Shown here one piece after another: positions 19,070-59,067 of a DNA stretch of 64,000 nucleotides; position 1 is the stretch's first letter; each line of letters starts with the position of its first letter. The notes beneath the pieces were generated by a model. The model did not search any database. It saw nothing but the letters and a program-made list of their open reading frames with translations, and was not told the DNA's origin. Source of the DNA: Mizuhopecten yessoensis (lineage: Eukaryota); assembly GCF_002113885.1 (NCBI RefSeq), contig NW_018408322.1:910570-974569 (forward strand), given 5' to 3'. The position numbers and the translations under genes are program-made.

Positions 19070-19233
19070 NNNNNNNNNNNNNNNNNNNNNNNNNNNNNNN
19101 NNNNNNNNNNNNNNNNNNNNNNNNNNNNNNNNNNNNNNNNNNNNNNNNNNNNNNNNNNNNNNNNNNNNNNNNNNNNNNNNNNNNNNNNNNNNNNNNNNNN
19201 NNNNNNNNNNNNNNNNNNNNNNNNNNNNNNNNN
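19070..19233. other. Assembly gap (N run)
   Basis: 164 consecutive N. Confidence 1.
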
Positions 19234-30200: not shown

Positions 30201-33200
30201 CCATTACGTTTGGTAGTAGACAATGACGAAATTGCGTCTTCCTCCTGTCAAAAGGTTCTGGGTATGTATATTGATAACCATCTAAGTTGGGTAACCCAAG
30301 TGAAAAAAGTATCTTCCAAATTAGCAACTTCTGTTGCACTTTTGCGTAGAATGGCAGGCTATTTGAATCAAGAAGCCCGAAAATTTTACTATAACGCCTA
30401 TATATTGCCAATACTGGACTTTGCTGCTATTGTGTGGGGAAATGGTTTAACAATTGAACAAGGAAATTATATCACTAAAATCCAGAAAAAGGCTATACGT
30501 ATTGTATTAAATAAGCCCATCTTAACTCCAAGCATTGAACACTTTAAATAATGTGATACTCTCTCTTTTAATTACAGAGTTAAATATCATACTTGTATAT
30601 TAGTATACAAAGCACTAAATGATTTAGCACCAGGCTACATTAAATCTAACCTAAGTCTATGCCATGATACATATAACTATGGGTTAAGATCAACTTCTCA
30701 TAATAATCTAGTTATACCAAGACACAACACTGAATTATTCAAAAAATCTTTCAACTATACCGGTGTTGTGTCATGGAATAATCTTCCAAACCAAATTAAG
30801 AATGATATAACAGTCTTCACGTTTAAAAAAAATCTCAAGAGTCACCTATTGTCTCTTTACTTAAATGGATAAATGAACATTATCAATTTCATGTTAATAA
30901 AAAGTTTGGTATTGAAATTCCACAGGACACTGTCAAAACCTATAATGTAAGGTTCCACATATGCTGTTAGTATATGCAAGATATTGTTGGACATACGTTA
31001 CCATAGACATTACAACACATGTAATTCTAGTCAGTTTACAGTAATCTCATTAATGGATTGTGTTTGTAGATTGTAGTTATATCATATCATTGTGTTATGT
31101 AATATCTTTATGCATTCATGTACTATATGTGTTTGAGGGCCGCATGGAAGATTAGTCTTGTACTAAATGTGTAACCCCCTTTAAATAAAGTTATTATTAT
31201 TATTATTATTATTATTAATAGGTCTTTTCACCTGTTGGCGAAAAGCCCTAATAACTTCTATCACTTCCAAAAAACAACAACTCAGAAATAAGAAAAGCTG
31301 AAAACGAATATGTAAACAAAGTTCAAGATAGACAAAATCATAACAAATGAAAACCATTCTGGAAATACATAAAATCAAGGAATCAGGATAACATAGGTGT
31401 GGCAGCACTAAAATCACGGGACACACTTGTCAGCGACAGGAACAGCACAAATCATACTTCACCAGTTCTCATACATCTCCACCCGTAGTAACAACAACAC
31501 GCCAAAACACGTATACACGTAGAACATTCGATTTCTATGGTATGGTGGCATATTTCTGCCATCGAGTTGCCGACTTGCGACTTAGTGATGTCGACATAAT
31601 TCCTGAATTATGTCGACATAATATGAGAAGATGTTAACATCACAGAAGACGATGTTGTCCTAAACTGAAGAATATGTCGACTTGCTAATTTACCGGCCAA
31701 GATAATAAATCCAAGATAATTGTCTAGCAAGTCGGAAAGTTGACTTTATATCGTGTTCGTGCTCGGATATGACACCAGTTTGTCAGTTGTTTATGTCGAC
31801 ATCTAACTAGAAGATGTCGAGATCTGGTCAGATCTTCTCTCTTGTAGGTTTCTCTTCGAAATAGACTGGATTGTCTACCGTAGTTTCAACTCTCCTCCAG
31901 GCTTCAATTAGCGTCTAAGTGCGCAGTTTAGTGGGAAAAATGGTACTTAGTCTGACAATCCAGTCTAGATTCGGAATTATCAAAGAGCGCAGCCTATCGG
32001 AGAGAAATGGTACTTAGGCAGAATATCGAGTTGAACTGTTCATTTCTTTCTTTTTTGATAAGAGAAAAACGATTCGTAGTTCCTAGTGAATTTACAATAC
32101 ATATTGTTTTCAATTTGCGCCAGTTTGGCTTAGATTAATACGGGATCGCGCTAGCATTAGTATCATTTCTGATAAAAATAATCTTTTAAATCAGCTAATG
32201 ATTACGATATTTTGGTAGAAGTCACATTTCTGATCTTTTCGTAAAAATCTTAAATCCGTCTTTCTATTATTGATTCAAAACAAGCTACGTCATTACCTCC
32301 ATTGGCTCTACCGGTGGGATGAAGACGTCTGACGTCACCATGGCAGGTGTATGATACTGAAACAGAAAGCAATTTACAACAAGAATGATGAATTTATATT
32401 CCGGATATAACGCCTGGAGAGGGATATCTAAATCTCGATATACCCGTTTTTTAATGCGACTAAGCCTTTCCGATTTGAAATGGCGTACCATTGGTTTTGT
32501 TGTTGATTTTGGTTGATAGAATTAATTCTTTTTCGTTTATATACACCTGAAAGTCATTTATCTCAAAATATATACTGGAGAAGGAATTTTTCAAAGTTGT
32601 TTCGGGATTTTTTTTTTATGAAATTTTTTGAAAGACATATTCATCAACATAAAATTTGAAAGACGTAAACATTTTGGGCTTTTCCTTTAATTTGTTACAA
32701 AGGCGTCAGTGCAGCAGGATAAATAAACATTATGCAAAGATATGAAAATTAATTTTACAATCATCTTTTCCTTACAGTATTCAACGGTTTTAATGGAATA
32801 TTTTTTCTTGCAACAAACAATCATGTAAATAATCCGACACAAACTGTTGAAAAACAGCAAAAAGATCCGTTGTACGTTCATATTATATTTTAGATTTGGG
32901 ACATTCTTTTTCATTTTTATATACGTATAGAAGCAACGGTTCAGGTTCAGGTTCCTTGGCAGATTCCCTCGTTGTCTTGTCGAGGCACCGCTACTTCCTA
33001 GTAGCGTAGAATATCGGCTCAGCAATAAAATCTGTACAGATATGTACACAGTCAGGGCGTATGTACACAGGGATCAAAAACTAAAGAGTTCTATTCTCTT
33101 CCATAAAACATAGTAAAGTTTATATGAAAAATATCATTAGTTGGTCTGCCATTCTCCTCTGTATCTAGTTCTGCAAGTAGCTTAACTCGTCGTAGATGGA

Positions 33201-36200
33201 TTTCTTGCAAGTATTCTCTACTGTGAAGTTCAATTTTGTTGATCTCATCATTGTTAAAGACATGGATATCGCTGATCTCTGGGTGTGTGCAATCTAGTAT
33301 CAGATGAGTGAATTTTGTAGGATTTGAAGTCAGTTCTGTATATTGCTGGAATACTTTGTAGTCGAAGATAGGCATGACCCCTTATTCTATCGTATGCTGT
33401 ACACACGGCAATGAAGTGTTGCCGGTCCTCTGGCCCTGTATGACATAGTCTGCATTCCGGGTTGACGTTGTATTGGTTGACGGCTGCTCTATTTGCCTGT
33501 ATGGTATATGTGCCCTTGAGGAGTCTTGTCTTGCATTCGGCTCGTTGGACATCGTGTTTGTTATTTCGCACTGTGGAGTAGACATGGTGAGGTTCTTTCA
33601 AGGTAACGGAATCAGGGTTAATGTATTTGAGTGACGATTTGGTGGCGAAATCATCTTTCCAGCTGTCTTGAATATGCGTAGATATCCCCCTGTCTAGCAT
33701 CTCTTTCCATTGACTTTTGAGTGGAAGATCTTCGAGGAGAGTAAATGCCGTTAGAAGATTGTACTGTCCCAGGAGGTTCCTCACATGAGAGAACTAGCTA
33801 TCCTCGTCTCTCGATCTCACTGCTAGTTGACGGTATGCTATAGAGTACTCTATGGAGTAGGGGTTGGTAATGATTCTGTAGAAAAGGTTCAGTGTGTTTC
33901 TGTCAATGATACAGCTCCAAGTAATGCCAGGGATATAGATGTTGCTGTCCTGTCCGGAAGATGTTGTACCTGTCTTAGTGATTTGGTCTGGAATCGTTCC
34001 AGGTCTTTCATCTGCGTTTTTGTGTAGTTGAGTATTTCCATTCCATATGTGAGCCTTGGGACGACATAGGTTTTCCAAAGATGAGCTTTAACAAGTTGAG
34101 ATGATCCATTCTTCCCATGAAATCCAGATCCCATGAGTGAGTAAGCTGTTTTCCTTCCTGTCTGGACAGTTTTCTTGCAGTCTATGGTGTTCTTGCCATT
34201 TCTAAGGACTCCAAGATGGGGTAACTGGTCTGTTATCTCTATTGGTTCATCATATATGGGGAATGTTTCTACATCTTTGGTGTTGTACAGTTTTATCTTA
34301 CTTTTTGAAGGGTTCCGTAGATATCTTTCTTGAGTTAAATGATTCTCTACCCTGGTCAGCATATGTTTCATGTCGAGAACCGTGTGAGCTAGAAGGGCAA
34401 TGTCATCCGCACATGTTGTGTGTGGGATTCTGATGTATCCTATATTGGCTCCCTCGCATTTTTCTTCCAGATCCTTCAGTAGGGGATTGTTAAAACGTTT
34501 GTAATGAGATGTGGAGAGTACTCCCCCTTGACGGACTCCTTGTCGAATAGTAAAGGGGTCTGAAGTCTGTCTCTCCCACTTGACGCCTGATGTGACATCT
34601 TTGTAGAGATCCTGAATCATCAGTCAGTCAGCGCCCGTGATTCCGTCGGCATAGAGCTTGTTTAAAAGAATATATTGATCCACGACATCGAATGCCTTCT
34701 GTGCATCGAGTGTTGTTAATAGAAGAGGCTTTCTTTGTAGACGGGCTTCCTTAAGGCATTCTGTTACGATGAGAGCTGAGTTGATAGATGATGAACCTTT
34801 GGTAAAACCGGTCTGTAGTTTGGATTGTGTTGGATTCAGGATAATGTTATGTCTGGCGTTGAGAATATGTTCCACGATTTTAAGTATGACTGTGGTAACG
34901 GTGATCCCACGGTAGTTGGAGGGGTTTTTCTGATCTCCCTTTTTGTAGATTGAAGTAAGTAGTCCAGATTTCAGCATTGCCGGTACTTTCTTTTTCTCTA
35001 GCATACTGTTGATAAGAGTTTTTAGGTAGGGAATTATGGTATCTCCAGACATTTTGAAGTATTCGCTAGTCATTGCCATGCTGTCAGCTGCTTTGTTGTT
35101 ATTTAGTTTTGAGATGGCTTTCTTGATTTCGGAATCTGAGGCCGGTGTTATTCCAGCTGGTTCCTGCTCACTGAGTATGTGTATAAGGTTTGTTGTTTTA
35201 TCAGCAATCTCTTTGTGGTCCTCCTTGAACAGTATGTTTTCCGAAGGGGTTGCCAGTCGTGAAAAGTGCTTGTTCCAGCAAAGAAGGCCCTCATCTGGTG
35301 TTGTATAGGTTACTCCGTCCAGCATAAGTGTTTTTGGTCCAGTAGCTGAAGTCTTCCTCTGTGATTTTACCAATTTATAAAATAGTTTCTGTTCCCCATA
35401 GGAGGTTATTATATGATTGGTCCATTCATCTCTCTTCTTGGCTGATTGTTGCCTCTGTAGTATCTGTAGGGTCTTTTTTCTGTTCTTCATATCCGGGTAC
35501 AGTAAGTTGGCTACATGACGAGGTTTTCCAGCTTCTTTCCATTTCCACATTGCTTGCTTACTGAGTTTTGCTGCATGCTGTATCTCATCACTCCATGGTG
35601 CTTTCTTTTTTCTCTTTAGTTGTATGATAGGTTTGTAGTTGGGTATACTTCTTGACGTTGCGTCTGATAATGTGCCTGTTAGATGCTGAATTGCCGATAT
35701 GGTTTCAAATTCATTAGCTGGTGTTTTTAGGTGATCCAGGTTATTTTCAATATATCTGTGGTAACTTTCGGGTCGCATTTGCTCCAGTTTGGTTTGTTGT
35801 TGATTGTTGTGGTTTTGTCTGTTTATCTTGTGTGTAGATCTAATTCTAGGATTACCGGGATATGGTCCGAGTGGTTGGTTGGGTTTTCCTCCAGGATTGT
35901 GCATTTTGACACCATACTCTCACCTTTCTTATTGAAGAGGACATAGTTAATTTCAGCAGTGTCCTTAGCATTTACATGGAAAAAGGTGTCAGTTCTGCAT
36001 TGTGCTGTTTGTAGATCCAGGTCCTTGCAGAATTTATACAATAATTTGTCTCTGTAGTTGTTGGGGCGTAGTCTGAGTGAGGCATTCATATCCCCGCAGA
36101 TGAAAATGGCATGAGTATCAAACTTTTGTATAATTTCCTCAATCTCATCTAATGTCTCTTGGTAGGCTGTCTCGGAGAGTCTCCCTCTACATGGCATGTA

Positions 36201-39200
36201 TACATTGATGATACAGACTGGGGGGTTTGTATCTAGTTCTAAAACGGTGATTCTTTCACTGCCGTCAGTGTGATGGGTGTAATTCACATCCATATCCTTT
36301 CTGTGCAGGGTTGAGACTCCACCATAGCTCCTCGGAACTTGGAGAGGGGATATAGGATCTTTGGAATCAGCAAACTTGGAGTGTGGATGGTGGGTGCCTG
36401 TGCTAAGGAGTTGATGTTGGAATTCAAAGAGCCAGTGTTCCTGTATACAAAGTACATCTGTGGTCTGTAGAAGTTGTTCTAGATACAAGCTGTTTGACTG
36501 GATATTTTTTATATTGAAGGTGCCTATATTGATTGATTTCCTTCCTTCCGCCAGTGTCTGTTTGCTGCACGGCCATGCCGTAAAAAAACCTGCCCTGTAG
36601 TATTGGAGTCATGGCTGTTTTTTGTTGACGACGGTTCATTCAGAGTGTCGTTGACAACCTTGGCTGTGATGCTGCTCGTATCAGGGTCCGGCATATGGAC
36701 AAGTTACGGTGGGGGCTCAGTCGTGGCAAGTTTTGCTGCGGAATTTTCATCTGCAAATATGACCTTTTTAGGAGTTGAGTGTGGCGTCAGGTGATGTAAT
36801 TATGACGATGTGGTATTCCTCCTTGTATCTACAGTACCAGATTCAGAGCGTCGTTTATGAGGAGGTAAGTATACCGGTTGACCTGTTGTCGGTTTTCCTG
36901 CTTGCCGTCTGGGGGGAATATTTCGTTGTGGATATATGCTTTCCTTAGGGGTCCCCGAGGGTTGGCTCCTTGGTCGTGAGGGTCGATTCTGGTCCCCCTG
37001 ATAACTTGTTCTTTGGGTTCCTCCCCACGTATTGGTGTGTGTTGTTGGCGTGCTCATATGATACGGTTGTGTTGATACTGCAAAGCCTTGACCGCTTGTA
37101 AGTACATGGGGGTGTACCGGAAGTTGGTGGAAATGAGGAGGTATCCCTAAGTACGGTGGTGGTGGGAGTGCCTCAACGGAAGTGTCCTGGGGTCAGGATA
37201 AAACTGTGGCTGTTGAACCATATAGGGTGTATAGTTGGTTGGTAGACGATGATAGTTGTCAAGTTTATTCTGAATTACCATCATATTCTCTATGCTGTTG
37301 ATTCTAGACCGCATTTGATCCATCTCCATTATCTGTAGTCGGTTTTGAAGCATATTGACTGTGTTGTGCATATCTAGTTCCATGGTACGTGTGCTTGTCC
37401 TGGTCCATGTCGATGGAGTTGCTGCCGGAGTGTGGTCTACCGTATGGTGTTTTGTTGTGGACTTCAACCTGTTTTTGCCTTTGTTTTGGTTTTCCCTTTG
37501 CAGTTTTCTGGGGCTGCTTTACTGGTATGTCTAGATTGTTAGAGTTTAGGACTGGCGACAGTTCCAATACCTTTGTTGTGACTGTTGAAGGGCCCATTTC
37601 TCCATCTGCTACAATAGCCTGACATGTATCGGAGTCATGTGTACCTCGGTGGTTGTTGTGGTCCATTGTGGTGGTCTTTATCTCTGTAGTACCTTCTGTT
37701 TCTTGATGTGCGATAGGCGGTCTAATTGAGATTTTAGTAGCGTCATCTTGGTATGTTTTGATGTGTACTTCATCATCTCGACCAATATCCATGGAGTCCG
37801 GTTCAAGTAGCGAGGTAATATGGATGTTCATATCGGAAATTTGAAGAGTTTCTGATCTTGCAGTTAGATGTCTGCATGATAGGCAACTGTAGACGGTATC
37901 TCCTTACTCATAAAAGTCTATGAAGTTCTGATCTAGGTGTTCACAATCATAATGGTACCATAGGGAGCAGACGTCGCATTCAAGGCCTACCTCTACATGA
38001 AGTTTACAATGTGGACATAGGCTTATGTCTTCATTGGTGCTGCATTCAATGTCTGGTATAGCAACTTCATTGCAGGTTTTGTGACCAGCTCCAGCCATAG
38101 TATGTTCAACTTCTGGGCATAGGGGGTCCCCATATATGCTAGTGTGTGCATCTGGTTTGTCAATACTCTGTGCTAGACATCTGTTTATGAGTGCTGCGAA
38201 GTGTCTGTCCAGTGTTGACATATTTGGATTCTGTTTTACAGCTTCTATGATGTCGGGTAGAATCTCATTTTGAAATTGTGGTGTTCCTTTTATCAACAGT
38301 GAGCATTGGGTATGGTACATGTTGATTGTGAATTTATGTCTTTTTCCCGGTTGTGAGTTTTTAAGTCTGTTGTTAGCCTTTATTATGGTTTCCGGGGAGT
38401 TTCCCTGTTGATCGTGGACCATTTCCAGTGCAAATGACATGTTGTACTTGTCCATAATTGTCTGGTCATTTGTGGCAGAGATGATTTCTGACTTGATCAA
38501 TTCCTAGCACCCGGTGCTGCATTCAACTTTGAGTTGATTGCCTCCATCTTTGGGGATGATGTTTATGAATGGAGTTTCACATTTGTCCTTTTCTTTTTTG
38601 AAGTGAGCGTTTTTGGTTCATGGTATATGATTTGGTTCTGGTATGAGGGTTGATCTGATAATTAATTAAAGGTGCAAGTTCATTATGTTGGTCAATGTTG
38701 ATTGTACATACATCAGTGGAAGCCATTATCATGCTGTCCGCCATCTTGGGTATACCCTGCTTGTACGTTGTAATGGTGATGGAAGTTTTTTGGCGATAGG
38801 TTGTAGTATGGCATACGGTCGGAGAGTTATGGTGATACAGATTGGTACAAGTCACTTTTCCAAATGGATTTTACATACTTCAGCTGTTAATGTAGATCGG
38901 CTTTCATGAATACAGGTTCATCGACGTGGGGCCGCCATCTTGGAAAATTAGACGACAGCTCAGTCTTCGTCGAGATACAGGGCAAAGGCAGACACTCCGT
39001 CACCAAGGGCCGGGGCGGTAGTAATTTTAAAAGTGAAATGGATATAAAAGAGTCAATGCGGCCTCTAAAACGCAGTAATTTAAAAGCAGTCTATTTTCTG
39101 CAACAGGGGAACGGTTTCCCGCCACTATAAAATGGGGTAGGACACATAAAAGTCAATAAAAACAGTTCTGTACACTTACTACACCCCTAAAAATATAGCT

Positions 39201-39500
39201 GTATGCTATATACCTAATCTAAAAACTTTATAAAGTCAACTGTAGGCAGGTGGAGCATTAAAACCAGTTAAAATCAAGCTAAAAACAGAGCAGATAAAAA
39301 AAACACGTCTTCACTCCACCGCCGTTAAAACCACCACGTCATATCTGAAACAACATACAATCTATTTTACTTGATTTTCTAGATTTGTTTTCCTTATTTC
39401 TATAACAATCCCCAAAAATAAAGAATAAAATATTTAAGAAAGTACCTGCCCAGGCACAAGTGCTGATAGCAAGAAGCGTGACTATCACAAGCAGGTTCAT
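21299..39500 (-). CDS. lyg: Goose-type (g-type) lysozyme, copy A, 6 coding exons, 201 aa, secreted
   Basis: Exons on the minus strand: 39446-39500, 32297-32356, 26505-26594, 23696-23808, 22838-22985, 21299-21438. All introns GT-AG with compatible phases; total 606 nt. Protein: [201 protein letters not shown]. It has a signal peptide, catalytic SRES Glu, and the GWGD, GILQCD, AYN and [10 protein letters not shown] motifs of g-type lysozymes. Confidence 0.96.
23200..23470 (+). mobile_element. Tc1/mariner transposase C-terminal fossil in lysozyme intron 4
   Basis: [18 protein letters not shown]...W..R motif, matching the mariner YSPDLAPxD box. A more degraded copy lies at ~54780-54900 in copy B. 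Confidence 0.7.
23970..25330. repeat. 26-bp minisatellite (aaggttcatacagatatattctattt)n in intron 3 of lysozyme A
   Basis: Roughly 50 tandem copies. Confidence 0.95.
25750..26500. repeat. 32-bp GC-rich minisatellite (acattacgccgtgcccgtctggtcgtgtactg)n next to the exon 3 donor, copy A
   Basis: Roughly 23 tandem units running up to the exon 3 donor at 26504. Confidence 0.93.
27470..31254 (-). mobile_element. Non-autonomous Helentron-like element split by the CR1/L2 LINE
   Basis: Terminal inverted repeat taggtcttttcacc..ggcgaaaagcccta at 31219-31250 continues into the (aag/aat) microsatellite at 29080-29128. Internal tgaccttga/aggtcaaggtca and tgacgtcatggcggccat motifs at 27470-29080. Confidence 0.6.
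29129..31216 (+). mobile_element. 5'-truncated CR1/L2-group LINE
   Basis: RT motifs [33 protein letters not shown] and MYADDS (ORFs 29531-29827, 29877-30551). 3' end is aataaag followed by a (tta)n tail ending ~31216. Confidence 0.9.
31862..31968. repeat. Short inverted-repeat element
   Basis: tagactggattgtc ... gacaatccagtcta, a perfect 14-bp inverted repeat. Confidence 0.55.
32939..39335 (-). mobile_element. Near full-length degenerate non-LTR retrotransposon (RTE-X-like) in intron 1 of lysozyme A
   Basis: ORF1 fragments 38855-36800 with a PHD finger ([16 protein letters not shown]). ORF2 fragments 36488-33091 with APE endonuclease (CIQEHW, GDMNA, SDHIPV), RT ([25 protein letters not shown]) and a C-terminal CxxC..H..C. 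Short (gaacct)n tail. Empty site in copy B at ~57940 (gaagcgacgtcatatctg); acg appears on both sides. Confidence 0.9.
33889..36488 (-). pseudogene. LINE ORF2 (endonuclease + reverse transcriptase), frameshifted
   Basis: ORFs 35823-36488 (APE), 34624-35904 and 33889-34620 (RT motifs). Confidence 0.9.
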
Positions 39501-39552: not shown

Positions 39553-40011
39553 AACCACAGACCACAATAACCCTTCCGGGTCATTGTAGTGAATGTAGTG
39601 CATAAGGACATTTCAGGTGGGTTACTAAATAATTTTTCCTGTCTGAATTATGACAGATATGTACAGATTTTTTACATGGAATTGTTCAACAATATCTATT
39701 CTAGTGATTAAATTTTATTTGACACTGTTTCCAAGTTTGTCTTGGCACCAGGACACAATGAGTGATGAGGCTTTCGCAGTGATATTTTGTGATTTTTAGT
39801 ATTTTCCCCTTTACATGCAGGGTAGTGACATTCAAATAAAATTATCTTTCTTAAATGCCGGTCATGAGGTACTTTCCAGCTCACCGTACGTTCAGTTTGA
39901 ATAGATCTACAATATGAAATAGGAACCAGGCCCTGCGAAAAGTTTTAAAATATTTTAATAATTTATTTCCTTTGGTATAACATATAGTAGAATTAATTGT
40001 GGTCTGAGGCC
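39553..40011 (+). repeat. Left long terminal direct repeat of the composite transposon
   Basis: Near-identical to 45047-45507; ends attgtggtctgaggcc; outer TIR is degraded (aaccacagaccacaat). Confidence 0.92.
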
Positions 40012-40037
40012 TGCATAGCAGAGAGTTATGCCTCAGG

Positions 40038-40129
40038 CAATCGCAACTTCTCGGCCAATTCCGGCTAGGCGCGGAAGGCGCGGCGCGGAATCATATGCCT
40101 AACCGGAATTGGCCGAGAAGTTGCGATTG
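40038..40129. repeat. 92-bp GC-rich hairpin with ~33-bp arms
   Basis: caatcgcaacttctcggccaattccggctaggc ... gcctaaccggaattggccgagaagttgcgattg (1 mismatch). Confidence 0.85.
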
Positions 40130-40402
40130 AGTCAGGCTCATCGGAAACTTCCGCTGTAGCCGGCACGTTTGAACATGACAGGCTGGAATATTGAAGTTAA
40201 AGGTTTGTACTAGCTGTCAGTGAATGTTTTGAATGAATTTGGATTTTATAGAACTTATTACAAAATAATTAATGTGATTTTAGGTAATTTTATGAGACAA
40301 ATTAGGAAGTTTAGATAGGAACTACAGCTATCCACGTGTTTATAAACCAGCAGTTACTTTCATTTTAACTAGCTTTTGACATTTGCGACAACTTTCTGAA
40401 AA

Positions 40403-40813
40403 ATGGAAGATTTTTGTTTAAAGTACAGTGAAATTTTAGACAAGAAATGTGTTGTGTCAAGTAATGGCCGATGTGTTATTTGGACAGGACCGGTGACACA
40501 CAACAGCAAATATGGTGTTGTTAGATACAAGCATCCAGATACCGGTGTATCGAAAACAGTTACAGCACACCGGTTAAGTGTTATAATGCATACGCAAAAT
40601 TTAAATTTAAGTTCGGACTTTGATGCGTCACACCTGTGTCACAACAACCTCTGTGTAGCGATAAGTCATATAAGTATGGAACCACACAGCATCAACAATA
40701 ACAGAATCCACTGTAAACATTTAAATAAGTGCACAGGGCATGGGGAGTTTCCTGATTGTTTACTGGATTTACATATACAGGTACATTACCTGAAATATTA
40801 TATACAAATTTAA
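40403..40813 (+). CDS. His-Cys box / His-Me finger (homing endonuclease-like zinc-binding loop) nuclease encoded by the transposon
   Basis: Open 136-aa ORF with CxxWxG..YG, AHRLS, SHLCHNxxC..H..E...N..R..C....C.GH...C motifs, typical of the I-PpoI-like His-Cys box family. Confidence 0.88.
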   Translation: MEDFCLKYSEILDKKCVVSSNGRCVIWTGPVTHNSKYGVVRYKHPDTGVSKTVTAHRLSVIMHTQNLNLSSDFDASHLCHNNLCVAISHISMEPHSINNNRIHCKHLNKCTGHGEFPDCLLDLHIQVHYLKYYIQI

Positions 40814-41031
40814 ATTTTACCTATATACAAAGCAATATTGAGCACGGCTCAAGCTCGGCTCATCACATGCATAATGACAAGATTTTATTTTTGTTATTTT
40901 TCTTTTTATATGTTTTGACAATATTTTTACTGTGGTAATATTACATTACTAATGAGTTTTTCTACTTATGATAATTGTGCTCATCATTGTTGGAATGCAG
41001 TCTACTGGTTCTGAGGTCAGGGGGGGGTTAT

Positions 41032-44000
41032 CTAGCTGCCCTTTTTGTAATCAGATCTTGCCCCCTTGTTCTGAATATGTCTCTGAATGGCTTCTGCTTT
41101 CAGTTCTAGGGTCCTTTTTTTGAAAGCTGAGCCCTTTTGATACTTTTGGTGGTAATCTTGCTCTGCTTGTATTTGCTGCAGAGAGCGTCTTACCTCAGGT
41201 GCTACAGTTGCACCGAGGCACTCCATTTTTGTCATAAGGGAATGTTCCACTCCATTATTACCTGTGTGAACAGCTCCATGGAATCGCGCGTTCATATTTC
41301 TGCTAAATAACACATTTTTCGGTAACCGGCTATTCAGAAGCCTGAAAAAGGCTTTGCATCTTTGGGTATTTGCCCCAAGTGACATTGCTGTGACATATTC
41401 ATCTGTCAACTTCATTTTCAGTATCTTGAGCATCAGGTGTTTGTCATTTTCATTCATATTCAAGCTGTACAGCTTGTATTTAGACAGGAATATGGGCCTG
41501 TTCCACCAAGTACCAGTACTAATACCACCATTGCATACAAATGAGTATCTTTTACATCTAGAACAATCCCCGCTGTAACATCGAAGGGTGGCATCTAAGA
41601 CAAGGGGCAGTTTTTCGGCTGGTTTTTGTCTCACCGTTACAATCCTTTGTAAGCTCTTTACAGACTAGGCTACATCGAGCTTTTATATCACGGCTTAGCA
41701 CCTTTTGGGATTCTATCTTTCCTTCTCTTGTTTTCATACCTGGGAACATGTCTGCTAAAATGTGCACGCATACATTTTCTAAATTGTGCTTGACCTAAAT
41801 GGGTTGGATCTGCTAGTCGTTTCACATCCCACATGGGTATAAATGCTTTATAAGCTGCGTCAAGACCTGCTACTGATCGCTCGTCCCCATCTGATGTAGC
41901 GTATCGTACAATAAGATCTTGCTGGTATAGCTGCTCACCTACTAGCTTAGCAGCCTCAAATTCTGACAACGGTGTCCCCACCCCTATTGTGGCACTACAG
42001 TCTATATGGCCACCAGGGCATTTTGCATCAAACCCTTTTCTGCGTAACCATTTACCTTTCCAGCATATTTGTGATTGGACAGCTATCCTTATAATGTAAT
42101 TTTTGTCAGTGACATCCTCGCGAGCTATAAGTGCTAACTGTGTAGCACTTGTACCAGGTTTATTACGACAGGTTATTGTTGACCTATTGTACCTGCCATC
42201 AACTTGAACATTAACCATGTTAGGGTCTGCAGCTCCCCTCAACTCCTTTATTTCTCTTACTTCCTGTGCTTTGTTTGCCATATCCTCCTTATTCAATGTT
42301 ATGATTGTTTCTGCTGCAATATTAGCATTTCTCTGCATACTGCTACGGCACGTGGGAACCAAATTCATAGCATTGAACAAACGCCGTGCCCCTGCTGGCC
42401 CCATAGATGTTTTTTGGAGGCCGGCATGCATTGTCAGATTCGGGACAGCAGGGTTTGGGCCCCTTTTAGGGGATTGAATCTCTTTGTACATTTTTTGATT
42501 GTTAGACACCCAACCACATGTTTTGCATACTACTTTGAATTTACATGTTACTCCTACTTTTACCTCTTTGTGAATGTCAACATCTGGATTGTCACACCTG
42601 TGTGACAAGGCAATTTGTATAAGATCACCTATTTTTAGGTCACCTGAGCTTTGCTCAAGTGACCTATTCCAATCACTTTCCGTTCGTCGTCGTGCGTAAA
42701 CTTTTTACATTATCAACTTCTCAAGAACCAGTGGATGGAATTTTTTCAAATTTGGTCAGAATCATCCTTGGTAGATGAGGCTACCAAATTGTAAAATTGG
42801 GATTCTTACCCCAACCCTAGGGGCCAGGGCGGGGCCCAAAAGGGAAAATTAACTAATATTTCAAATATCTTATTCTCCAGACTCAGAGGTATTACAGTCA
42901 TTTTCTCTGCATGGATGGAAAGATCATCAGGGGCTTTATTTAAATTGTAAATTTCAGGACCCCCGAGCTATCCGTTCTCCCTTGGGGAGGGGGTAAAGTT
43001 TACTATAGTTTATATAGGGAAACAACACTTTTGGGTATATTTTGACAATTTTCTGTTGGAAATTATTTTTACTTGGTCAGAATCATCCTTGGAGGAGGAA
43101 GATGGTTTTAAATTGTAAAATTGGGATTCCTACCCCAACCCTAGGGGCCAGGGCGGGGCCCAAAAGGGAAAATTAACCAATATTTCAAAAATCTTCTTCT
43201 CCAGACTCAGAGGTATTACAGTCATTTTCTCTGCATGGATGGAAAGATCATCAGGGGCTTTATTTAAATTGTAAATTTCAGGACCCCCGAGCTATCCGTT
43301 CTCCCTTGGGGAGGGGGTAAAGTTTACTATAGTTTATATAGGGAAACAACACTTTTGGGTATATTTTGACAATTTTCTGTTGGAAATTATTTTTACTTGG
43401 TCAGAATCATCCTTGGAGGAGGAAGATGGTTTTAAATTGTAAAATTGGGATTCCTACCCCAACCCTAGGGGCCAGGGCGGGGCCCCAAAGGGAAAATTAG
43501 CCAATATTTCAAAAATCTTCTTCTCCAGACTCAGAGGTATTATAGTCATTTTCTCTGCATGGATGGAAAGATCATCAGGGGCTTTATTTAAATTGTAAAT
43601 TTCAGGACCCCCAGGCTATCCGTTCTCCCTTGGGGAGGGGGTAAAGTTTACTATAGTTTATATAGGGAAACAACACTTTTGAGTATATTTTGACAATTTT
43701 CGGTTGGAAATTATTTTTACTTGGTCAGAATCATCTTTGGTTGATGACGGTATCACATTGTAAACTTGGAATTCCTGCCCCATCCCCCAGGGGTTAGAGT
43801 GGGGCCCCAAAGGGAACATTTACAAATATTTCAAAATTGTTATCCTTTGATGACATGACAAGTACTGTATTTCACTTAGTTTACATGCTGATTTCCACAT
43901 CACATCTAAACAATAAAATAAAGCTACCAGTACCTATGATATAGCTCAGGTGACTGCTAAGGCCCTTGGGCCTCTTGTCTTAGAATCTATTAGTCTGTTA

Positions 44001-44332
44001 CCCTGATTTTGAACACCATTATCTAACCTAGACCTTTTTTCCCTATTTTCATGGAGGTGTGATGCAACTTCTATCACTGGTTGTGGTTTCTTGGGCCTAA
44101 GGTGCTTGACAATGCCAGGGTTACCTTCAGTGTCGGGAGTGCTAGGAAAGCTACAACCAGGATGCGTTACAGTGACTAAGGAATACATATCAGAACTCAG
44201 TCTCTTCCAGGTACCTGAGACATTTTCACTTGGAACTTTACTCACCCCATGCCCTGCAGTCTTGGTACCCTTATTATGTGGTGTATTACACTTTTTGACT
44301 ACATTTTTACTTCTCTTATACCTTCCCTTCAT
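41032..44332 (-). pseudogene. Disrupted DDE transposase (Kolobok/Mutator-like domain)
   Basis: Fragments 44332-43980, 42631-41688, 41767-41558 and 41634-41032. Motifs CKTC, VQVDGRYN (D1), YATSDGD (D2), DPTH and NTQRCKA (expected catalytic E reads K). Two frameshifts, and interrupted by the 42632-43979 insertion. Confidence 0.82.
42632..43979 (+). mobile_element. Non-autonomous Helentron-like (HINE) element carrying ~3 tandem ~323-bp repeats, inserted in the transposase
   Basis: 5' tttttaggtcacctgagc..gctcaagtgaccta inverted repeat, cgtc microsatellite, repeat units starting ~42752/43074/43397/43721, 3' subterminal ctcaggtgac, hairpin aggcccttgggcct. Inserted in a T-run. Confidence 0.78.
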
Positions 44333-45046
44333 GGTCCTTTCAGGTCAAATATCCCTATCTTAATAACTGCAATACTCAAAAACACCTATATTTACCTAAA
44401 TTGACTATAAACACATATGTTCTGAATATTTACACCACTTAATAAGGATTACAAGCCCACAGGGACAGGATATCTTATCCCTTTGTCACACTGGTATTGG
44501 CCCCTTGAGAGGTGGCACTTGCTTACCTTGCTATGTTTGACATGTATTTACTAAATAATTAGTAGGGCTATAAACTTACAATTACATTCATTTTGTAGGG
44601 GAGAAGTCCCCTTATACAGTGGTATAAGGTTAGACAGGCTGTGATGTCATATAGAAAAGTTATATCATTAATAATGTGTAATTTTTACTTGAAAATTGTG
44701 ATTTTTGAAATTTCATAATTAAAAGTCCATTAAACTTTACTTCTTTTGAAATTTTATAAACTGCATGTAAAATGTGAAAGAGTATTAAATAAGCTTTAAT
44801 TTGATATATGTTATTGATATATTACTTAATTATTACTCGCCCAATAGTCATTTATCTATGAGACCTCTCTGAAATATTAGATGCAGAATACAGCATTGCT
44901 GTGGATTAGGGGTAGGGGAACTAAAAATGAAAGAACTTTTTTATTTTTGGAGTAAATTTCACAATAATTTGCAATAACATTTGTAATTGCATGCCAAATG
45001 TAATGATAGAATAAAAAAAATATGTCTCCAAAAATCACCAAATACA

Positions 45047-45507
45047 GGCCTCAGACCACAATAACACTTCCGGGTCGTTGTATACGAATGTAGTGCATAA
45101 GGACATTTCAGGTGGGTTACTAAATAATTTTTCCTGTCTGAATTATGTCAGATATGTACAGTTTTTTTTACATAGAATTTTTCAACAATATCTATTCTAG
45201 TGATTAAATTTTATTTGACACAGTTTCAAAGTTTGTCTTGGCAGCAGGACACAATGAGTGATGAGGCTTGCACAGTGATATTTTGTGATTTTTAGTATTT
45301 TCCCCTTTACATGCAGGGTAGTGAAATTCAAATAAAATTATCTTTCTTAAATGCCGGTCATGAGGTACTTTCCAGCTCACCGTACGTTCAGTTTGAATAG
45401 ATCTACAATATGAAATAGGAACCAGGCCCTGTGCAAAGTTTTAAAATATTTTAATAATTTATTTCCTTTGGTATAACATACAGTAGAATTAATTGTGGTC
45501 TGAGGCC
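45047..45507 (+). repeat. Right long terminal direct repeat of the composite transposon
   Basis: Starts ggcctcagaccacaat and ends attgtggtctgaggcc, a perfect 16-bp TIR pair. Confidence 0.93.
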
Positions 45508-52102: not shown

Positions 52103-52584
52103 GTTTGGTTGGCTGGTTGGTTAGTTTTACAAGGTTTAACGTCCTATAAGTATCAACAGCTAAGGTCATTTAAGGTCGTGCCTCCATATGTGTTGTGTAT
52201 GCGTGCTTGTGTGTATGTGTGCCGGAGACCGGGTATGATGTTGTGTTTGCCTCCTTGTGATAGCGCGGATCTCATGCCGAGCCTTTAGTGCTAGTCTCAC
52301 TGAAAACCATGCCAATGGCACCAAACACAGCATTTCGCCCGGTCACATTATACTGACAACGGGCGAACCAGATGTTGTTATTGCCCTAAATGCTGGGCGT
52401 TAAGCAGGTAACAACAATTACCATGTTTAAGATGTTTGGTGTGTCCCGGCCTGGGGACAGAATCCATTGCCTTCAAAGCCAAACGGGAGATATTGCCTAA
52501 GCAAGGTGCTAGGAAATTAAAGGTAGATAGTAGTAGAGAGAAATGTTAAGATCCTAAATATTGTAATGGTTGCAGCAGATTTAT
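52103..52584 (-). mobile_element. Meta-domain-like SINE at the end of duplication unit A
   Basis: Same family as 53480-54115; paralogous to 60920-61500; truncated at the duplication junction. Confidence 0.75.
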
Positions 52585-52751
52585 CATTACTATTGTGTGA
52601 GTCCTTACCAACAAAGCATACTCCAATGTCCTGTGCTTATAACGATAATTTATTCACCATAATATTAACTATCTTTCTTCGAATATCAATGCCAAAATCC
52701 TGAAATCAGCATGAATAATTTTCCTGTCATTCCCTCGTGCTTCACGACATT

Positions 52752-55700: not shown

Positions 55701-58109
55701 GGCACCGTCGGCAACTATTTCGAGCCGTTTTAATTACGCTTTTACCGTGCTCCCGATACGCTCCCTCTACGCTCAATACGATCTAGAAGCGTACTAGAAG
55801 CGTAATATGGTCAGCACCAGAAAAGCGTCACACAGTCTTCTAGGTCTGTGTAACAATGTAGTATGTTCCTGTACGTCGTAGTGGCAACGTACTTGTAGTA
55901 GAAACGACCGCTTGGTCGGCATTGGTCTAGGTGTAATCGTAGTGACAGCGAGTCAGCAGCGCTTTTGACGTAGAAGCATCGCAGTACAGTCGTGATGTAA
56001 TTTTTAATTTGGCTGAATTTTGACGGCGATAATGCCCCGATTTGATATTCGTTTTTCAAATCGGGGATGATCGGTATGGTCTTCGCAAGGTCGCAGAGCT
56101 GTGTGAATGGGGTAGAAGGTTCACAAACATATTTTTATTTTATTTTCCTTTCAAAGCTTATACAAAGATTTACCTAAAGTTCAATAATGTTTATACCACA
56201 CCAATTTCATGCATGTACATGAATTTGTGTTTTCCTTATAAACCTGGTCATGTACTGACATTATGCCGCGCCCACCTGCTCGCGTACTGACATTATGCTG
56301 TGCCGGACTGGTCGTGTTCATGTATTACGCCGCGCCCGCCTGGTCGTATACATGTATTACGCCGCGCCCGCCTGGTCGTATATAGGTATTACGCCCCGCC
56401 CGCCTGCCGCGCCCGCCTGGTCGTATACATGTATTACGCCGCGCCCGCCTGGTCGTATACATGTATTTCGCCGTGCCGTCTGGTGGTGTACTGACATTAT
56501 GCTGCACCTGCCTGGTCGTGTAGTGCCATTACGCCGCGCCCGCCTGGTCGTGTAGTGATATTACGCTGCGCCCGCCTTCTCGTGTACTGACATTACGCTG
56601 TGCCTGCCTGGTCGTATACAGGTATTACGCTGCGTCCGCCTGGTCGTATACATGTATTACGCCGCGCCCGCCTGGTCGTATACATGTATTACGCTGCGCC
56701 CGCCTGGTCGTATACATGTTTTACGCCGCGCCCGACTTGTCGTGTGCATTACTATTTTGCTCTGATTTTTTGGTGTACTTACAGTGCGCCGCGCCTGATG
56801 CGTAGTAACAAGATTTCTTGTTGTTCAGGTCATGCAAATCGTAATCTACGTCATGGTTGGATGCAGCGACACCTGTTGGGAATAAATGTCAATTGTTTTA
56901 GACTCTCTATGAGGTTCAAAATATTTAAAAAAGACTACTTTCTACAAGCTGAAGTCATGAGATCAGAGGACCTCTACATAAGTGACTTAATTCAAATAAG
57001 GACCACGAAATACTGCAAAATGTTCCAAATTTTCCAGGGGGGATGAGGAAAATGGTGAAAAGACATGTTTTTTAAAGAAAATGTTCAGGTGGGTTCTTGA
57101 AGCTTAAAAAGACCCATATGGGAATGCGTTAGCATTAGTGTCACTTCTGATAATATAATCTTTAAAATTAGCTAATGATTACGATATTTTGGTAGAAGCT
57201 ATATTTCACATCCTATGGTCTTTTCGTAAAAATCCCAAATCCACTTTTTTGATTATTGATTCAAAACAAGCTTCGATAGTACCTCCATTGTGTTCACCGG
57301 TGGGGTGGAGTCGTCTGACGTCACCATGGCAGGTGTATGACGCTGAAACAAAAAGCAATTTGCAACACGAATGATAAACTTATTTTTCCGGATTTAATGT
57401 CTGGAGAGGGATATCCAAATACGGATATATTAATAGGTTCTTGAATGGATGGAGGCTTCCCAAAACAACTTCATCAGGTGTACCCCTGGTACATGTACAT
57501 GTACTTCCGTGTTTGTTGTTGATTTTGGTTGATAGAATCGTTGTTGGTTTTTTTTCATTTATATATCTAAAAGTCATTTGTTTCAAAATATATACTTGAG
57601 AAAGTTGTTTTGGGAAATATTTTTTCAAAATGACATATAGTCATCAACATGAAATTAGAAACACATAACTTTTTGGCCTTTTTCCTTAATTTTGTTGCAA
57701 AGGCGTCAGTGCAGCAGGTTTAATATATATTGTGCAAGAATACGAAAATAAATTTTACAATCAACTTCTCCTTACAGTATTAAACGTGTTTGATGGAATA
57801 TGTTTTTGCGCAACAAACATTCATATAAAGTTACAATGCATTTTAGTATATTGTTGAAAAATTCAAAACCCGAGGAACATTAATATTATATTTCAGATTG
57901 GGACATTGTTTTCGCTTTGAAATTTATAAATATAAAGAAGCGACGTCATATCTGAAACAACATACAAATATATATATTTTCTTTCTAGTTATTTTTCTGA
58001 TTTAAAGAAATAAAAAATCCCCTGAAACAAAAAATAAAATATTAAGAAAAGTACCTGCCCATGCACCGGTGCTGATAGCAAGAAGCGTGACTATCACAAG
58101 CGGGTTCAT
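52752..58109 (-). CDS. lyg: Goose-type (g-type) lysozyme, copy B, 6 coding exons, 200 aa, secreted
   Basis: Exons on the minus strand: 58055-58109, 57283-57342, 56783-56872, 55113-55225, 54268-54412, 52752-52891. GT-AG introns; total 603 nt. Protein: [200 protein letters not shown]. Confidence 0.97.
53480..54115 (-). mobile_element. Meta-domain-like SINE with ~14-bp TSD in intron 5 of lysozyme B
   Basis: TSD gcaagataaatgaa (53466-53479) / gcaagatgaatgaa (54116-54129). Reverse strand has accaaagtccttaaaaaggtagttg..cctgcttagcgttcagcatttag..tcagtataatgtgaccggg..tttcagtgagatagcactataa and an (aaacc)n tail. Confidence 0.8.
55433..56114. mobile_element. CpG-rich non-autonomous DNA transposon fragment in intron 3 of lysozyme B
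   Basis: Abrupt GC/CpG-rich block flanked by gaaggt on both sides, ending gtgtgaatggggta. Copy A reads ctattgaaggttcacac uninterrupted at ~25385-25401. Confidence 0.6.
56240..56780. repeat. 32-bp GC-rich minisatellite next to the exon 3 donor, copy B
   Basis: Roughly 16 units; dominant variant gtattacgccgcgcccgcctggtcgtatacat. Confidence 0.93.
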
Positions 58110-58739
58110 CGTTGAAATCTGGCCGACGAGACGAATGTCCTGAAGACTAGTCAATGCCATAGAGCATATGTCTTATCTTCGGTAGATTGAGTATATTTAG
58201 AATGGCTTACACTAAGGGCCCTCTAGGTCAGTCACGTATATTATTGCTTACGTGTCCATTCATTATTCGTTACTGTCTGAACGAGAAAACACATACTCAC
58301 TGGATACCACAAAATATTATTTACCAAATTTGATTACTTATACCTTATTTAGTTTATCTCCGACATAAGCCAAATAGGATTTTTAACAAATATATTTATT
58401 TTAAACTCCATCACAGAAATATTAAATCTCAATGAAAAATCTGAATAATTTAGTTTAAAGGGGTTTGACCTTGCAATGGTAACTAACTCCTGCTTTCGTA
58501 ACTGTAAATTAACACAAATGAAAAAACAACATATGTATAGATACATACACGTGTACATATGTACACGGTATCTACACAAGACAGAGAAATCTCAACCAAA
58601 GTTTAAGATTCTTAAATGTCTAGCCTGAGGCTTTGCCGAGGTTAACCTTCGTGCTGGACAGCCAAACTCTTACCCTCAGGTTAAGATTTCCCTGTCCCCG
58701 AACCACACCCATGAAAGGGTTTTCATTGAATCTAAATTC

Positions 58740-58887
58740 TATGGTGGCTTATATATGACATTTCGTCGTTTCGCTTTGTCGCCCACGAAATAAGGGTTTT
58801 CGTCTTTTCGTTATTTCACTTTTTCGCTTGGCGTTATTTCTCGGGCGACAAAGCGAAAAGACGAAATGTCATCTATAAGACGCCATA
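58740..58887. mobile_element. Small foldback MITE with ~54-bp TIRs, specific to unit B
   Basis: tatggtggcttatatatgacatttcgtcgtttcgctttgtcgcccacgaaataa / ttatttctcgggcgacaaagcgaaaagacgaaatgtcatctataagacgccata. Flanks aaattc/atattc; empty site gaatctatattctacg at ~46800-46815. Confidence 0.82.
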
Positions 58888-59067
58888 ATATTCTACGAAC
58901 GAAACGAAATATGTCCCGATAATATCCAGAATCGGGAGCCATGGAATTTCTCAAAGTAAATTATTACGAGTAGTCTCCCATCGTACATAAACGTTACTCT
59001 TGTGGAGGTTCTCTTGGTGAGGAAATTAACAAGACTTTTATTTCTCGATATAATTTTAGTAATGTGC

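What the first reader, a model, noticed from the sequence alone, without database searches (positions are those of the whole stretch)
39553..45507. Eukaryotic composite-like transposon: two TIR-bounded ~460-bp direct repeats around a DDE transposase and a homing-endonuclease-like His-Cys nuclease
Seen: two direct repeats (39553-40011, 45047-45507), each a MITE-like unit with 16-bp TIRs ggcctcagaccacaat. They enclose a DDE transposase (-) arranged tail-to-tail with an intact 136-aa SHLCHNxxC nuclease (+). The layout resembles a bacterial composite transposon or an LTR element, but it is a DNA transposon. Established: this matches the described KolobokP lineage of Kolobok elements, so the class is probably not new, although this family may be. 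Inference: recombination between the repeats could leave solo repeats or circles. The nuclease ORF is still open while the transposase is dead, which could be chance given its small size.
Basis: partly seen in the sequence, partly recalled or inferred. Interest (0 to 1): 0.85.

Follow-up and report, generated by a model that had tools for sequence, protein, structure and literature searches.

The report
Decayed KolobokP transposon in scallop
This is a worn-out copy of a KolobokP DNA transposon, a composite-like kind described in 2022 and already reported from this scallop genome, so it is ordinary apart from belonging to a family that paper does not list.

Summary
Two direct repeats (39553-40011, 45047-45507; about 96% identical) carry their own 16-bp inverted ends. 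They enclose a broken DDE transposase (minus strand) and an intact 136-aa I-PpoI-like His-Me nuclease (plus strand), tail to tail.

This is the LTDR-INT-LTDR architecture of KolobokP (Kojima & Bao 2022, PMC9587614).

The genome is Mizuhopecten yessoensis ASM211388v2, which that paper analysed. The paper lists two families there. This element is a third, unlisted one:
- It shares no nucleotide similarity with them beyond the inverted ends.
- Its transposase is 41% and 28% identical to theirs.
- It is closest to KolobokP-1_PeMa of Pecten maximus.

The same junctions recur at other loci. One copy (C4568) keeps an intact 672-aa transposase but a frameshifted nuclease.

Solo repeats are abundant and have 4-bp duplications of the form ANNT, not TTAA.

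This copy is immobile:
- Its outer left end is damaged and it has no target duplication.
- The transposase is split by a Helentron-like insertion, frameshifted, and carries E543K.
- The open nuclease ORF is compatible with chance.

One point is unexplained. About a third of repeat ends genome-wide abut 4-7 INT-like bases (TGCA or TGTA) with no INT behind them.

Interest is low: a new member of a known kind.

The parts
39553..40011 (.). Left LTDR (459 bp). The inner TIR (39996-40011) is perfect. The outer TIR (39553-39568) is degenerate (AACCACAG...). 8 of its 14 private changes lie in the first 39 bp.
40012..45046 (.). Internal region (INT). It is 5035 bp here and about 3576 bp without the two secondary insertions. 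It starts TGCATAG and ends AATACA, as KolobokP-1_PeMa-I does in the opposite orientation.
40030..40137 (.). Secondary insertion of a roughly 105-bp palindromic MITE (41-nt arms, 90% complementary). It is absent from the C4568 copy and has dozens of copies genome-wide.
   Evidence: (I1)
40403..40813 (+). Intact His-Me finger (His-Cys box, I-PpoI-like) nuclease ORF, 136 aa. S76-H77, C79, C84, H89, E93, N98, C104, C110, H113 and C119 are all present.
40965..42634 (-). Transposase remnant, residues about 119-672. It has 2-bp deletions near 41752 and 41615, further small indels near 41038 and 41020, a 12-bp insertion at 41522-41533, and the catalytic E543 changed to K (RCKAFF).
42635..43977 (.). 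1343-bp secondary insertion that splits the transposase gene. It looks like a Helentron/HINE non-autonomous element and carries 3.2 copies of a 324-bp tandem repeat (42786-43836).
43978..44332 (-). Transposase remnant, N-terminal residues 1 to about 119 (ATG at 44332-44330).
45047..45507 (.). Right LTDR (461 bp) with perfect 16-bp TIRs at both ends.
57943..58500 (.). Paralogous empty site in a diverged segmental duplicate. The left and right flanks of the element are separated there by only 13 bp (GAGCATATGTCTT), which are absent at the filled site.

Best explanation
The stretch 39553-45507 is one old, immobilised monomer (LTDR-INT-LTDR) of a KolobokP DNA transposon in the Yesso scallop genome. 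The family is the scallop relative of KolobokP-1_PeMa and is distinct from the two families published for this assembly. In an active member, the INT-encoded Kolobok-type DDD/E transposase acts on the GG...CC inverted ends of the 461-bp repeats. It can move the whole composite or a single repeat and makes a 4-bp target duplication (the duplications are shown for solo repeats; action on the whole composite is inferred). The small I-PpoI-like nuclease is inferred, following Kojima & Bao, to cut inside a repeat or at abutted repeat ends. That would provoke unequal crossover or re-entry of an INT-plus-repeat circle into solo repeats, which would regenerate or multiply composites. This step is not shown here or anywhere else. 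This copy inserted 52 bp upstream of a signal-peptide exon, after a local segmental duplication. At that time both repeats were near-identical to the family majority. It has since accumulated about 4.4% divergence between its repeats. It lost its left target duplication and the tip of its left end. It took in a palindromic MITE and a Helentron-like element, and its transposase suffered frameshifts and a catalytic E-to-K change. Its nuclease ORF stayed open, most simply by chance.
For: Architecture. Gene content: PF20700 8e-47; PF05551 8e-9; I-PpoI is the best PDB match, aligned across SHLCHN...H...E...N. Published definition of the lineage. Genome identity: KolobokP-1_MiYe ends fall at C107:320557-320591 and 324609-324643 and at C134:566416-566450, the coordinates given for NEDP02000107.1 and NEDP02000134.1 in the paper's Data S2. 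Same junctions elsewhere: C4568 is complete, and C4672, C5393, C3051, C16600 and C57953 are partial. The intact 672-aa transposase in C4568 aligns over its full length with the KolobokP-1_MiYe transposase at 41% identity, and the DGRYN, CCHC, SDGD, DPTH, CYSGDCxxC and QxxE columns are conserved. The nuclease is 44% and 35% identical to those of the two published families. Distinct family: only a 33-bp TIR hit to the published copies, and none of contigs 4995, 4568, 5416, 1125 or 4672 appears in the paper's copy list. Relation to KolobokP-1_PeMa: same TIR, shared blocks in the repeat, and INT ends tgtata... / ...ctatgca. 4-bp TSDs on solo repeats. 58 of 111 termini have flanks starting with A. 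Decay of this copy.
Against: Neither complete composite (window, C4568) has a recognisable TSD, so movement of the composite as one unit is not directly shown for this family. No multimers were identified. No phylogenetic tree was built; placement rests on pairwise identity to two named members and on an eye comparison with the printed KolobokP-1_PeMa consensus. Current Repbase or Dfam could not be consulted, so 'unlisted' refers to the 2022 paper only. The nuclease's role is hypothesis only.
Confidence: 0.93

Rival explanations
1. Chance juxtaposition: two independent insertions of a 460-bp MITE happen to flank an ordinary single-copy Kolobok/Mutator-like transposon, and there is no composite unit.
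For: The 460-bp unit is mostly solo: 170 first-look candidates against about 10 INT-bearing loci. It transposes on its own with 4-bp TSDs. The composite has no TSD of its own here.
Against: Base-identical LTDR-INT junctions occur on both sides at C4568 and on one side at C4672, C5393, C3051, C16600 and C57953. The same architecture and the same INT termini occur in Pecten maximus KolobokP-1_PeMa. The architecture is lineage-wide.
Confidence: 0.02
2. It is a Mutator (MULE/MuDR) superfamily element, as the Pfam name of the transposase model suggests, and not a Kolobok.
For: PF20700 'Mutator-like transposase' matches at E 8e-47 (window fragment) and 4e-55 (intact copy).
Against: TSDs are 4 bp, not the 8-10 bp of MuDR (established knowledge). 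The transposases of the published KolobokP-1_MiYe and -2_MiYe hit the same Pfam model even more strongly, so the name reflects Pfam's labelling. The DxxH motif and the two zinc-finger blocks that the paper gives as Kolobok/KolobokP signatures are present.
Confidence: 0.03
3. The nuclease gene of this copy is kept open by selection. It would serve the family in trans, complementing the C4568 copy whose transposase is intact but whose nuclease is frameshifted, or it would be host-domesticated.
For: All catalytic and zinc-binding residues are intact. The window copy keeps the ancestral N-terminus that C4568, C3051 and C5393 have lost. A second open copy lies on contig C56327. The decay is complementary: transposase intact only at C4568, nuclease intact here.
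Against: pN/pS against the C56327 copy is 0.49 from only 3 synonymous and 6 non-synonymous differences, which cannot be told from neutrality. With about 2% lineage divergence and about one small indel per 250 bp between copies, a 411-bp ORF stays open by chance roughly one time in three (my estimate). No expression data were available.
Confidence: 0.12

Closest known systems
KolobokP-1_PeMa (Pecten maximus; Kojima & Bao 2022, Data S1)
   Same: Same TIR start (ggcctcagaccacaattaatt). LTDR 460 vs 461 bp, INT 3609 vs about 3576 bp. INT starts tgtat... and ends ...ctatgca in the transposase orientation. Long identical blocks in the LTDR, e.g. gtgagctggaaagtacctcatgaccggcattt.
   Different: Different host genus. 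By eye the LTDRs are only about 70-75% alike, so it is a separate family by the usual 80% rule. This was not aligned by a tool, because the consensus exists only as printed text.
KolobokP-1_MiYe and KolobokP-2_MiYe (the two published families of this same assembly)
   Same: Same architecture, same gene pair tail to tail, same Pfam models. Transposase 41% and 28% identical, nuclease 44% and 35% identical, 4-bp TSD.
   Different: No nucleotide similarity except 33 bp at the TIR. Different TIR tip (GGCCTCAG vs GGACTAAG / GGACTCAC). None of this family's contigs is in the paper's copy list.
I-PpoI, His-Cys box homing endonuclease of a Physarum group I intron (PDB 1A73, 1CZ0, 1EVW)
   Same: Best PDB match by sequence (E 0.002 with a 3-sequence profile). 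The SHLCHN motif, the H/E/N catalytic set and the Cys/His zinc ligands align.
   Different: Encoded in a DNA transposon, not in an intron. Only the core of about 60 residues aligns. The target site is unknown and no cleavage has been shown.
Bacterial composite (compound) transposons and IS26 pseudo-compound transposons
   Same: Two copies of a short, independently mobile TIR-bounded unit flank a cargo. Solo units are common.
   Different: Here the flanking units are non-coding and the transposase sits in the cargo. The arrangement is an inherited lineage trait, not an opportunistic one-off.
LTR retrotransposons and their solo LTRs
   Same: Long terminal direct repeats that were near-identical at insertion and diverged afterwards. 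Abundant solo repeats.
   Different: No reverse transcriptase or integrase. The repeats have 16-bp TIRs. The encoded proteins are a DDE transposase and a His-Me nuclease.

Membership tests
KolobokP (Kojima & Bao 2022) | LTDR-INT-LTDR: an internal region between two long terminal direct repeats | tested here: met
   459-bp and 461-bp direct repeats around a 5035-bp INT. Same structure at C4568.
KolobokP (Kojima & Bao 2022) | LTDR length about 450 bp (or about 660 bp) | tested here: met
   459/461 bp, within the 445-480 bp class of Table S1.
KolobokP (Kojima & Bao 2022) | Each LTDR has its own short TIRs; termini are 5'-RR ... YY-3' | tested here: met
   Perfect 16-bp TIR GGCC...GGCC in the right LTDR and in most solo copies. 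The left LTDR's outer TIR is degraded (13 of 16).
KolobokP (Kojima & Bao 2022) | Short TSD (3-5 bp, mostly 4) without strong target specificity | tested here: met
   Perfect 4-bp TSDs on at least 11 solo LTDRs: ACAT, ATAT, AATT, ATAA, AGAC, CGGT. 58 of 111 termini have flanks of the ANNT type. Not met for this copy or the C4568 copy individually.
KolobokP (Kojima & Bao 2022) | INT encodes a Kolobok DDD/E transposase with a CCHC zinc finger after the first D, a C/DxxH motif, and a second zinc finger before the last E | tested here: met
   The intact C4568 protein has D264 (DGRYN), C309/C324/H328/C331, D367/D369, D394-P-T-H397, C472/C477/C480/C487 and E543. All are in columns conserved with KolobokP-1_MiYe and -2_MiYe.
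KolobokP (Kojima & Bao 2022) | A small His-Me finger (His-Cys box) nuclease downstream of the transposase on the complementary strand | tested here: met
   136-aa ORF, PF05551, I-PpoI best PDB match, convergent with the transposase.
KolobokP (Kojima & Bao 2022) | Solo LTDRs present | tested here: met
   170 first-look candidates, 40 scored at 87-100% identity, against about 10 INT-bearing loci.
KolobokP (Kojima & Bao 2022) | Multimers (LTDR-INT)n-LTDR | tested here: inconclusive
   None recognised. C3051 and C76745 hold rearranged or duplicated fragments. No further loci could be fetched.
KolobokP (Kojima & Bao 2022) | Transposase falls inside the KolobokP clade in a phylogeny | not tested
   Only pairwise and three-way alignment with two named members. 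The paper's alignment is held only as printed text.
Kolobok superfamily, classical definition | TTAA target site duplication | tested here: not met
   TTAA appears once among 111 terminus flanks. The paper itself reports no strong target preference for KolobokP.
MuDR/Mutator superfamily | 8-10 bp TSD | tested here: not met
   TSDs are 4 bp. The PF20700 hit is shared by published KolobokP transposases.
Bacterial-type composite transposon | Transposase encoded by the flanking IS units | tested here: not met
   No ORF of 60 aa or more lies within either LTDR. The transposase is in INT.

The most novel reading that the evidence does not exclude
About a third of all repeat (LTDR) ends in the genome abut 4-7 bases identical to the INT termini, with no INT behind them and no clean TSD. 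TGCA(T) is always on the INT-facing side of a left repeat, and TACA is always on that of a right repeat. This may be a sequence record of how KolobokP works. Either repeats are copied out of composites together with a few donor bases (a circle-junction, copy-out mechanism), or breaks are made next to the repeat-INT junction (by the nuclease or by the transposase at the inner TIR) and then end-joined. Either would be direct genomic evidence for a step that the 2022 paper could only infer from a few footprints.
Probability: 0.25. Interest if true: 0.45.

Novelty: new member of a known kind. Interest (0 to 1): 0.2.

Why it matters
It matters little for the class. KolobokP, its composite-like build and its nuclease were published in 2022, and this species is in that paper's table.

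The modest additions are these:
- A third family in Mizuhopecten yessoensis, sister to a Pecten maximus family. This suggests long vertical persistence in scallops.
- One locus (C4568) has an intact transposase and another (this window) has an intact nuclease. These are candidates for functional tests of the unproven nuclease role.
- The target duplication has the form ANNT.
- The insertion has a paralogous empty site and lies 52 bp upstream of a secreted-protein gene's start codon.
- There is an orientation-specific excess of INT-derived bases beside solo repeats, which may bear on the transposition mechanism.

Tried and rejected
1. The second 'pair' of repeats on C2988 (3.7 kb apart) looked like different cargo. 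It has an assembly gap beside one copy, and both copies have the same 1.5-kb right flank at 99.9% identity, so it is an assembly or duplication artefact.

2. I looked for a TSD of the composite. None was found for the window copy (CATA vs ATCT) or for C4568 (TACA vs ATGT). The paralogous empty site shows that 13 bp plus the expected left TSD are missing at the window's left junction.

3. I tested whether solo repeats with a TGCA flank share a non-autonomous INT. An all-against-all BLAST of 1.5-kb flanks of 30 loci found none. Five unfetched copies share TGCATAGAACGCG.

4. I scanned for TSDs outside a 3-6 bp carried extension. Only 3-of-4 matches turned up, which is not convincing (reasoned).

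5. A single-sequence PDB search gave only E 0.02 to I-PpoI; a 3-sequence profile improved it to 0.002.

6. Selection on the nuclease ORF: the counts are too small to tell.

7. Not run on purpose: the large protein-database searches, structure prediction and complex prediction, because the verdict did not depend on them.

9. The KolobokP-1_PeMa consensus was compared by eye only, because it exists only as printed text and was not typed into a tool.
Full report
OBSERVATION

The window holds two direct repeats at 39553-40011 and 45047-45507. They are 95.6% identical over 459 aligned bases and 97-98% identical in ungapped blocks (D2 and D5; alignment). The right copy ends in a perfect 16-bp inverted repeat, GGCCTCAGACCACAAT / ATTGTGGTCTGAGGCC (I14). 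The left copy has a perfect inner end, but its outer end reads AACCACAGACCACAAT.

Between the repeats lie two genes:
- An open 136-aa ORF on the plus strand (40403-40813) matches Pfam PF05551, 'zinc-binding loop region of homing endonuclease', above the curated cut-off.
- Several minus-strand ORFs match PF20700 at E 8e-47.

WHICH GENOME

The assembly has 987,588,634 bases in 82,659 contigs. A 35-base string from the start of the published KolobokP-1_MiYe LTDR hits C107:320557-320591, C107:324609-324643 and C134:566416-566450. These are the end coordinates that Kojima & Bao's Data S2 gives for NEDP02000107.1 and NEDP02000134.1. The published KolobokP-2_MiYe copy at NEDP02002015.1:1937250-1941697 likewise holds a transposase and a nuclease ORF at C2015. 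The genome is therefore Mizuhopecten yessoensis ASM211388v2, and contig Cn corresponds to NEDP0200n.1.

IS THE COMPOSITE A UNIT?

The 461-bp repeat has 170 first-look candidates in the genome; 40 were scored, at 87-100% identity. The interior occurs at only about ten loci. The decisive point is that the repeat-interior junctions recur.
- C4568 has repeat, the same interior, then repeat. Its right repeat is split by a 2.6-kb insertion.
- C4672 and C5393 have the interior's right end abutting a repeat.
- C3051 has a repeat abutting the interior's left end.
- Terminus searches add C16600 and C57953.

A further apparent pair on C2988 is an assembly artefact: there is a gap next to one copy and the two flanks are identical.

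WHAT IT IS

A full-text search for 'KolobokP' finds Kojima & Bao 2022 (PMC9587614). The paper defines KolobokP by the following features:
- each LTDR has its own 11-18-bp TIRs, ending 5'-RR...YY-3';
- TSDs of 3-5 bp;
- many solo LTDRs.

Every testable feature is met here. The C4568 copy has an intact 672-aa transposase ORF. It aligns end to end with the KolobokP-1_MiYe transposase at 41% identity and with the KolobokP-2_MiYe ORF at 28%. The following are invariant in that alignment (motif definitions):
- first catalytic D, in DGRYN;
- the CCHC block C309...C324-x3-H-x2-C331;
- the second D, in SDGD;
- the DPTH motif;
- the CYSGDCxxC...C zinc finger;
- the last E, in QxxE.

The window nuclease is 44% and 35% identical to the nucleases of the two published families. 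I-PpoI is its best match in the PDB, at E 0.02 alone and 0.002 with a three-sequence profile. The alignment runs across SHLCHN, the second His, the Glu, the Asn and the Cys ligands. Pfam's name for PF20700, 'Mutator-like', is no contradiction, because the published KolobokP transposases hit the same model at E 4.5e-91 and 4.6e-25.

WHICH FAMILY

Table S1 of the paper lists two families for this assembly:
- KolobokP-1_MiYe: 4505 bp, LTDR 452/453 bp.
- KolobokP-2_MiYe: 4193 bp, LTDR 460 bp.

This element is about 4.5 kb without later insertions (2 x 461 bp plus about 3576 bp). It shares only a 33-bp terminal match with genomic copies of those families. None of the contigs carrying it (4995, 4568, 5416, 1125, 4672) appears in the paper's copy list.

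Its LTDR and INT ends resemble the printed consensus of KolobokP-1_PeMa from Pecten maximus instead. They share the first 21 bases, long identical blocks, and INT beginning tgtat... and ending ...ctatgca. I compared these by eye only and estimate about 70-75% identity. It is therefore a third family of M. yessoensis, unlisted in that paper and sister to a Pecten family. Whether Repbase has since named it could not be checked.

TARGET DUPLICATIONS

Oriented solo LTDRs show perfect 4-bp TSDs: ACAT four times, ATAT, AATT twice, ATAA, AGAC and CGGT. Among 111 termini with a perfect 16-mer, 58 have outward flanks beginning with A. That implies TSDs of the form ANNT. TTAA is not the rule.

STATE OF THE WINDOW COPY

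Alignment with the C4568 INT gives 96.1% identity. It shows the following changes in the window copy:
- A palindromic MITE of about 105 bp near 40030-40137.
- A 1343-bp insertion at 42635-43977 inside the transposase gene.
- 2-bp deletions near 41752 and 41615, and further small indels.
- The catalytic Glu changed to Lys (RCKAFF against RCEAFF).

The 1343-bp insertion sits between T and T. It has a 5' hairpin, a 3' subterminal inverted repeat followed by the palindrome GGCCCTTGGGCC, and carries 3.2 copies of a 324-bp repeat. This is the build of non-autonomous Helentron-type elements, from my own knowledge of that group. The same kind of 3' end recurs in several other loci and in the insertion that splits C4568's right LTDR.

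A diverged segmental duplicate inside the window (57943-58500) is an empty site. There the two flanks are 13 bp apart. At the filled site those 13 bp, the expected left TSD and the tip of the left TIR are missing or altered. Of the 20-odd differences between the two LTDRs, nearly all are private to one of them against the family majority: 14 in the left copy (8 of these in its first 39 bp) and about 6 in the right. So the two LTDRs were near-identical at insertion and have diverged by about 4.4% since. The left end also suffered local damage. This copy can no longer move as a unit.

THE OPEN NUCLEASE ORF

The window ORF keeps all catalytic and zinc ligands and the ancestral N-terminus.
- C4568 has a 2-bp frameshift at the catalytic SHIS|MEP stretch.
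- C3051 and C5393 carry stops.
- The small contig C56327 holds a second open copy.

Against that copy, pN/pS is 0.49 from 3 synonymous and 6 non-synonymous changes, which is uninformative. Given the indel and substitution load between copies, I estimate that a 411-bp ORF stays open by chance about one time in three. The family does still have one intact transposase gene and at least one intact nuclease gene, but on different copies.

MECHANISM

Shown:
- TIR-bounded LTDRs insert with 4-bp TSDs.
- Composites with identical junctions exist at several loci.
- The two LTDRs of this copy were alike at insertion.

Inferred:
- The transposase moves the whole composite by its outermost ends.
- The nuclease cuts within LTDRs or at abutted ends and drives unequal crossover or re-entry of LTDR-INT circles into solo LTDRs. 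This is the model of Kojima & Bao.

Nothing here tests the nuclease's role.

UNEXPLAINED

42 of the 111 termini have outward flanks starting with TG: TGCA 23, TGTA 10, and others 9. INT begins TGCATAG and ends AATACA. In oriented copies, the TGC-type flank is always on the side that faces INT in a left LTDR (8 of 8), and TACA is always on the side that faces INT in a right LTDR (5 of 5). Only about ten of these flanks continue into INT. The rest diverge after 4-7 bases, lack clean TSDs and share no common flank. A symmetric target preference cannot explain this. Two explanations remain open: donor bases carried over when an LTDR leaves a composite (compare the 1-5-bp footprints), or breakage next to the junction followed by end joining.

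CONTEXT

The left end of the element lies 52 bp from a minus-strand ATG (39500-39498). That ATG opens a signal-peptide exon ([19 protein letters not shown], then a GT donor), and the paralog has the same exon at 58109.

VERDICT

The class is known, and this species is already listed as a host. The family appears to be an unlisted member. Interest is low.

Noticed in passing
window 42635-43977 (also L062:6194-8791, and 3' ends in L004, L017, L037, L067): Helentron/HINE-like non-autonomous element inserted between T and T. It has a 5' hairpin and a 3' subterminal inverted repeat followed by the palindrome GGCCCNNGGGCC and TCTTGT. The window copy carries 3.2 copies of a 324-bp tandem repeat, so it is a mobile carrier of satellite-like DNA.
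   Followed up: partly
window 40030-40137: Palindromic MITE of about 105 bp (41-nt arms, 90% complementary) inserted in INT. Dozens of copies across the genome match on both strands.
   Followed up: partly
genome-wide LTDR termini; e.g. L005, L006, L012, L016, L024: 38% of perfect LTDR termini abut TG-type flanks (TGCA 23, TGTA 10 of 111). These equal the first or last bases of INT, are orientation-specific, lack a clean TSD and have no INT behind them. Unexplained.
   Followed up: partly
window 20375-52584 versus 52117-61407: Diverged tandem segmental duplication (about 72-92% identity in blocks). The second copy lacks the KolobokP insertion and serves as an empty site at 58161/58175.
   Followed up: partly
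window 39339-39500 (-) and 57960-58109 (-): First exon of a secreted-protein gene (signal peptide [19 protein letters not shown], then a GT donor), 52 bp from the element's left end. A paralogous exon lies at the empty site. Another note of this scan calls it lysozyme A; not verified here.
   Followed up: partly
window about 33200-38500 (-): Non-LTR retrotransposon with endonuclease-like (35823-36488) and reverse-transcriptase-like (33889-35904) ORFs, apparently inside the first intron of the flanking gene. Judged from the ORF translations only.
   Followed up: no
L062:3340-5358 (-), genome C4568:428339-430357: Intact 672-aa transposase ORF of this family, in a copy whose nuclease has a 2-bp frameshift at the catalytic stretch and whose right LTDR is split by a 2.6-kb insertion.
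   Followed up: yes
L061 (genome C2988:39926-44050): Two LTDR copies 3.7 kb apart with identical right flanks and an assembly gap beside one. This is probably an assembly duplication, not a composite.
   Followed up: yes
window 19070-19233: Run of N (assembly gap or masked stretch). Left as it is.
   Followed up: no
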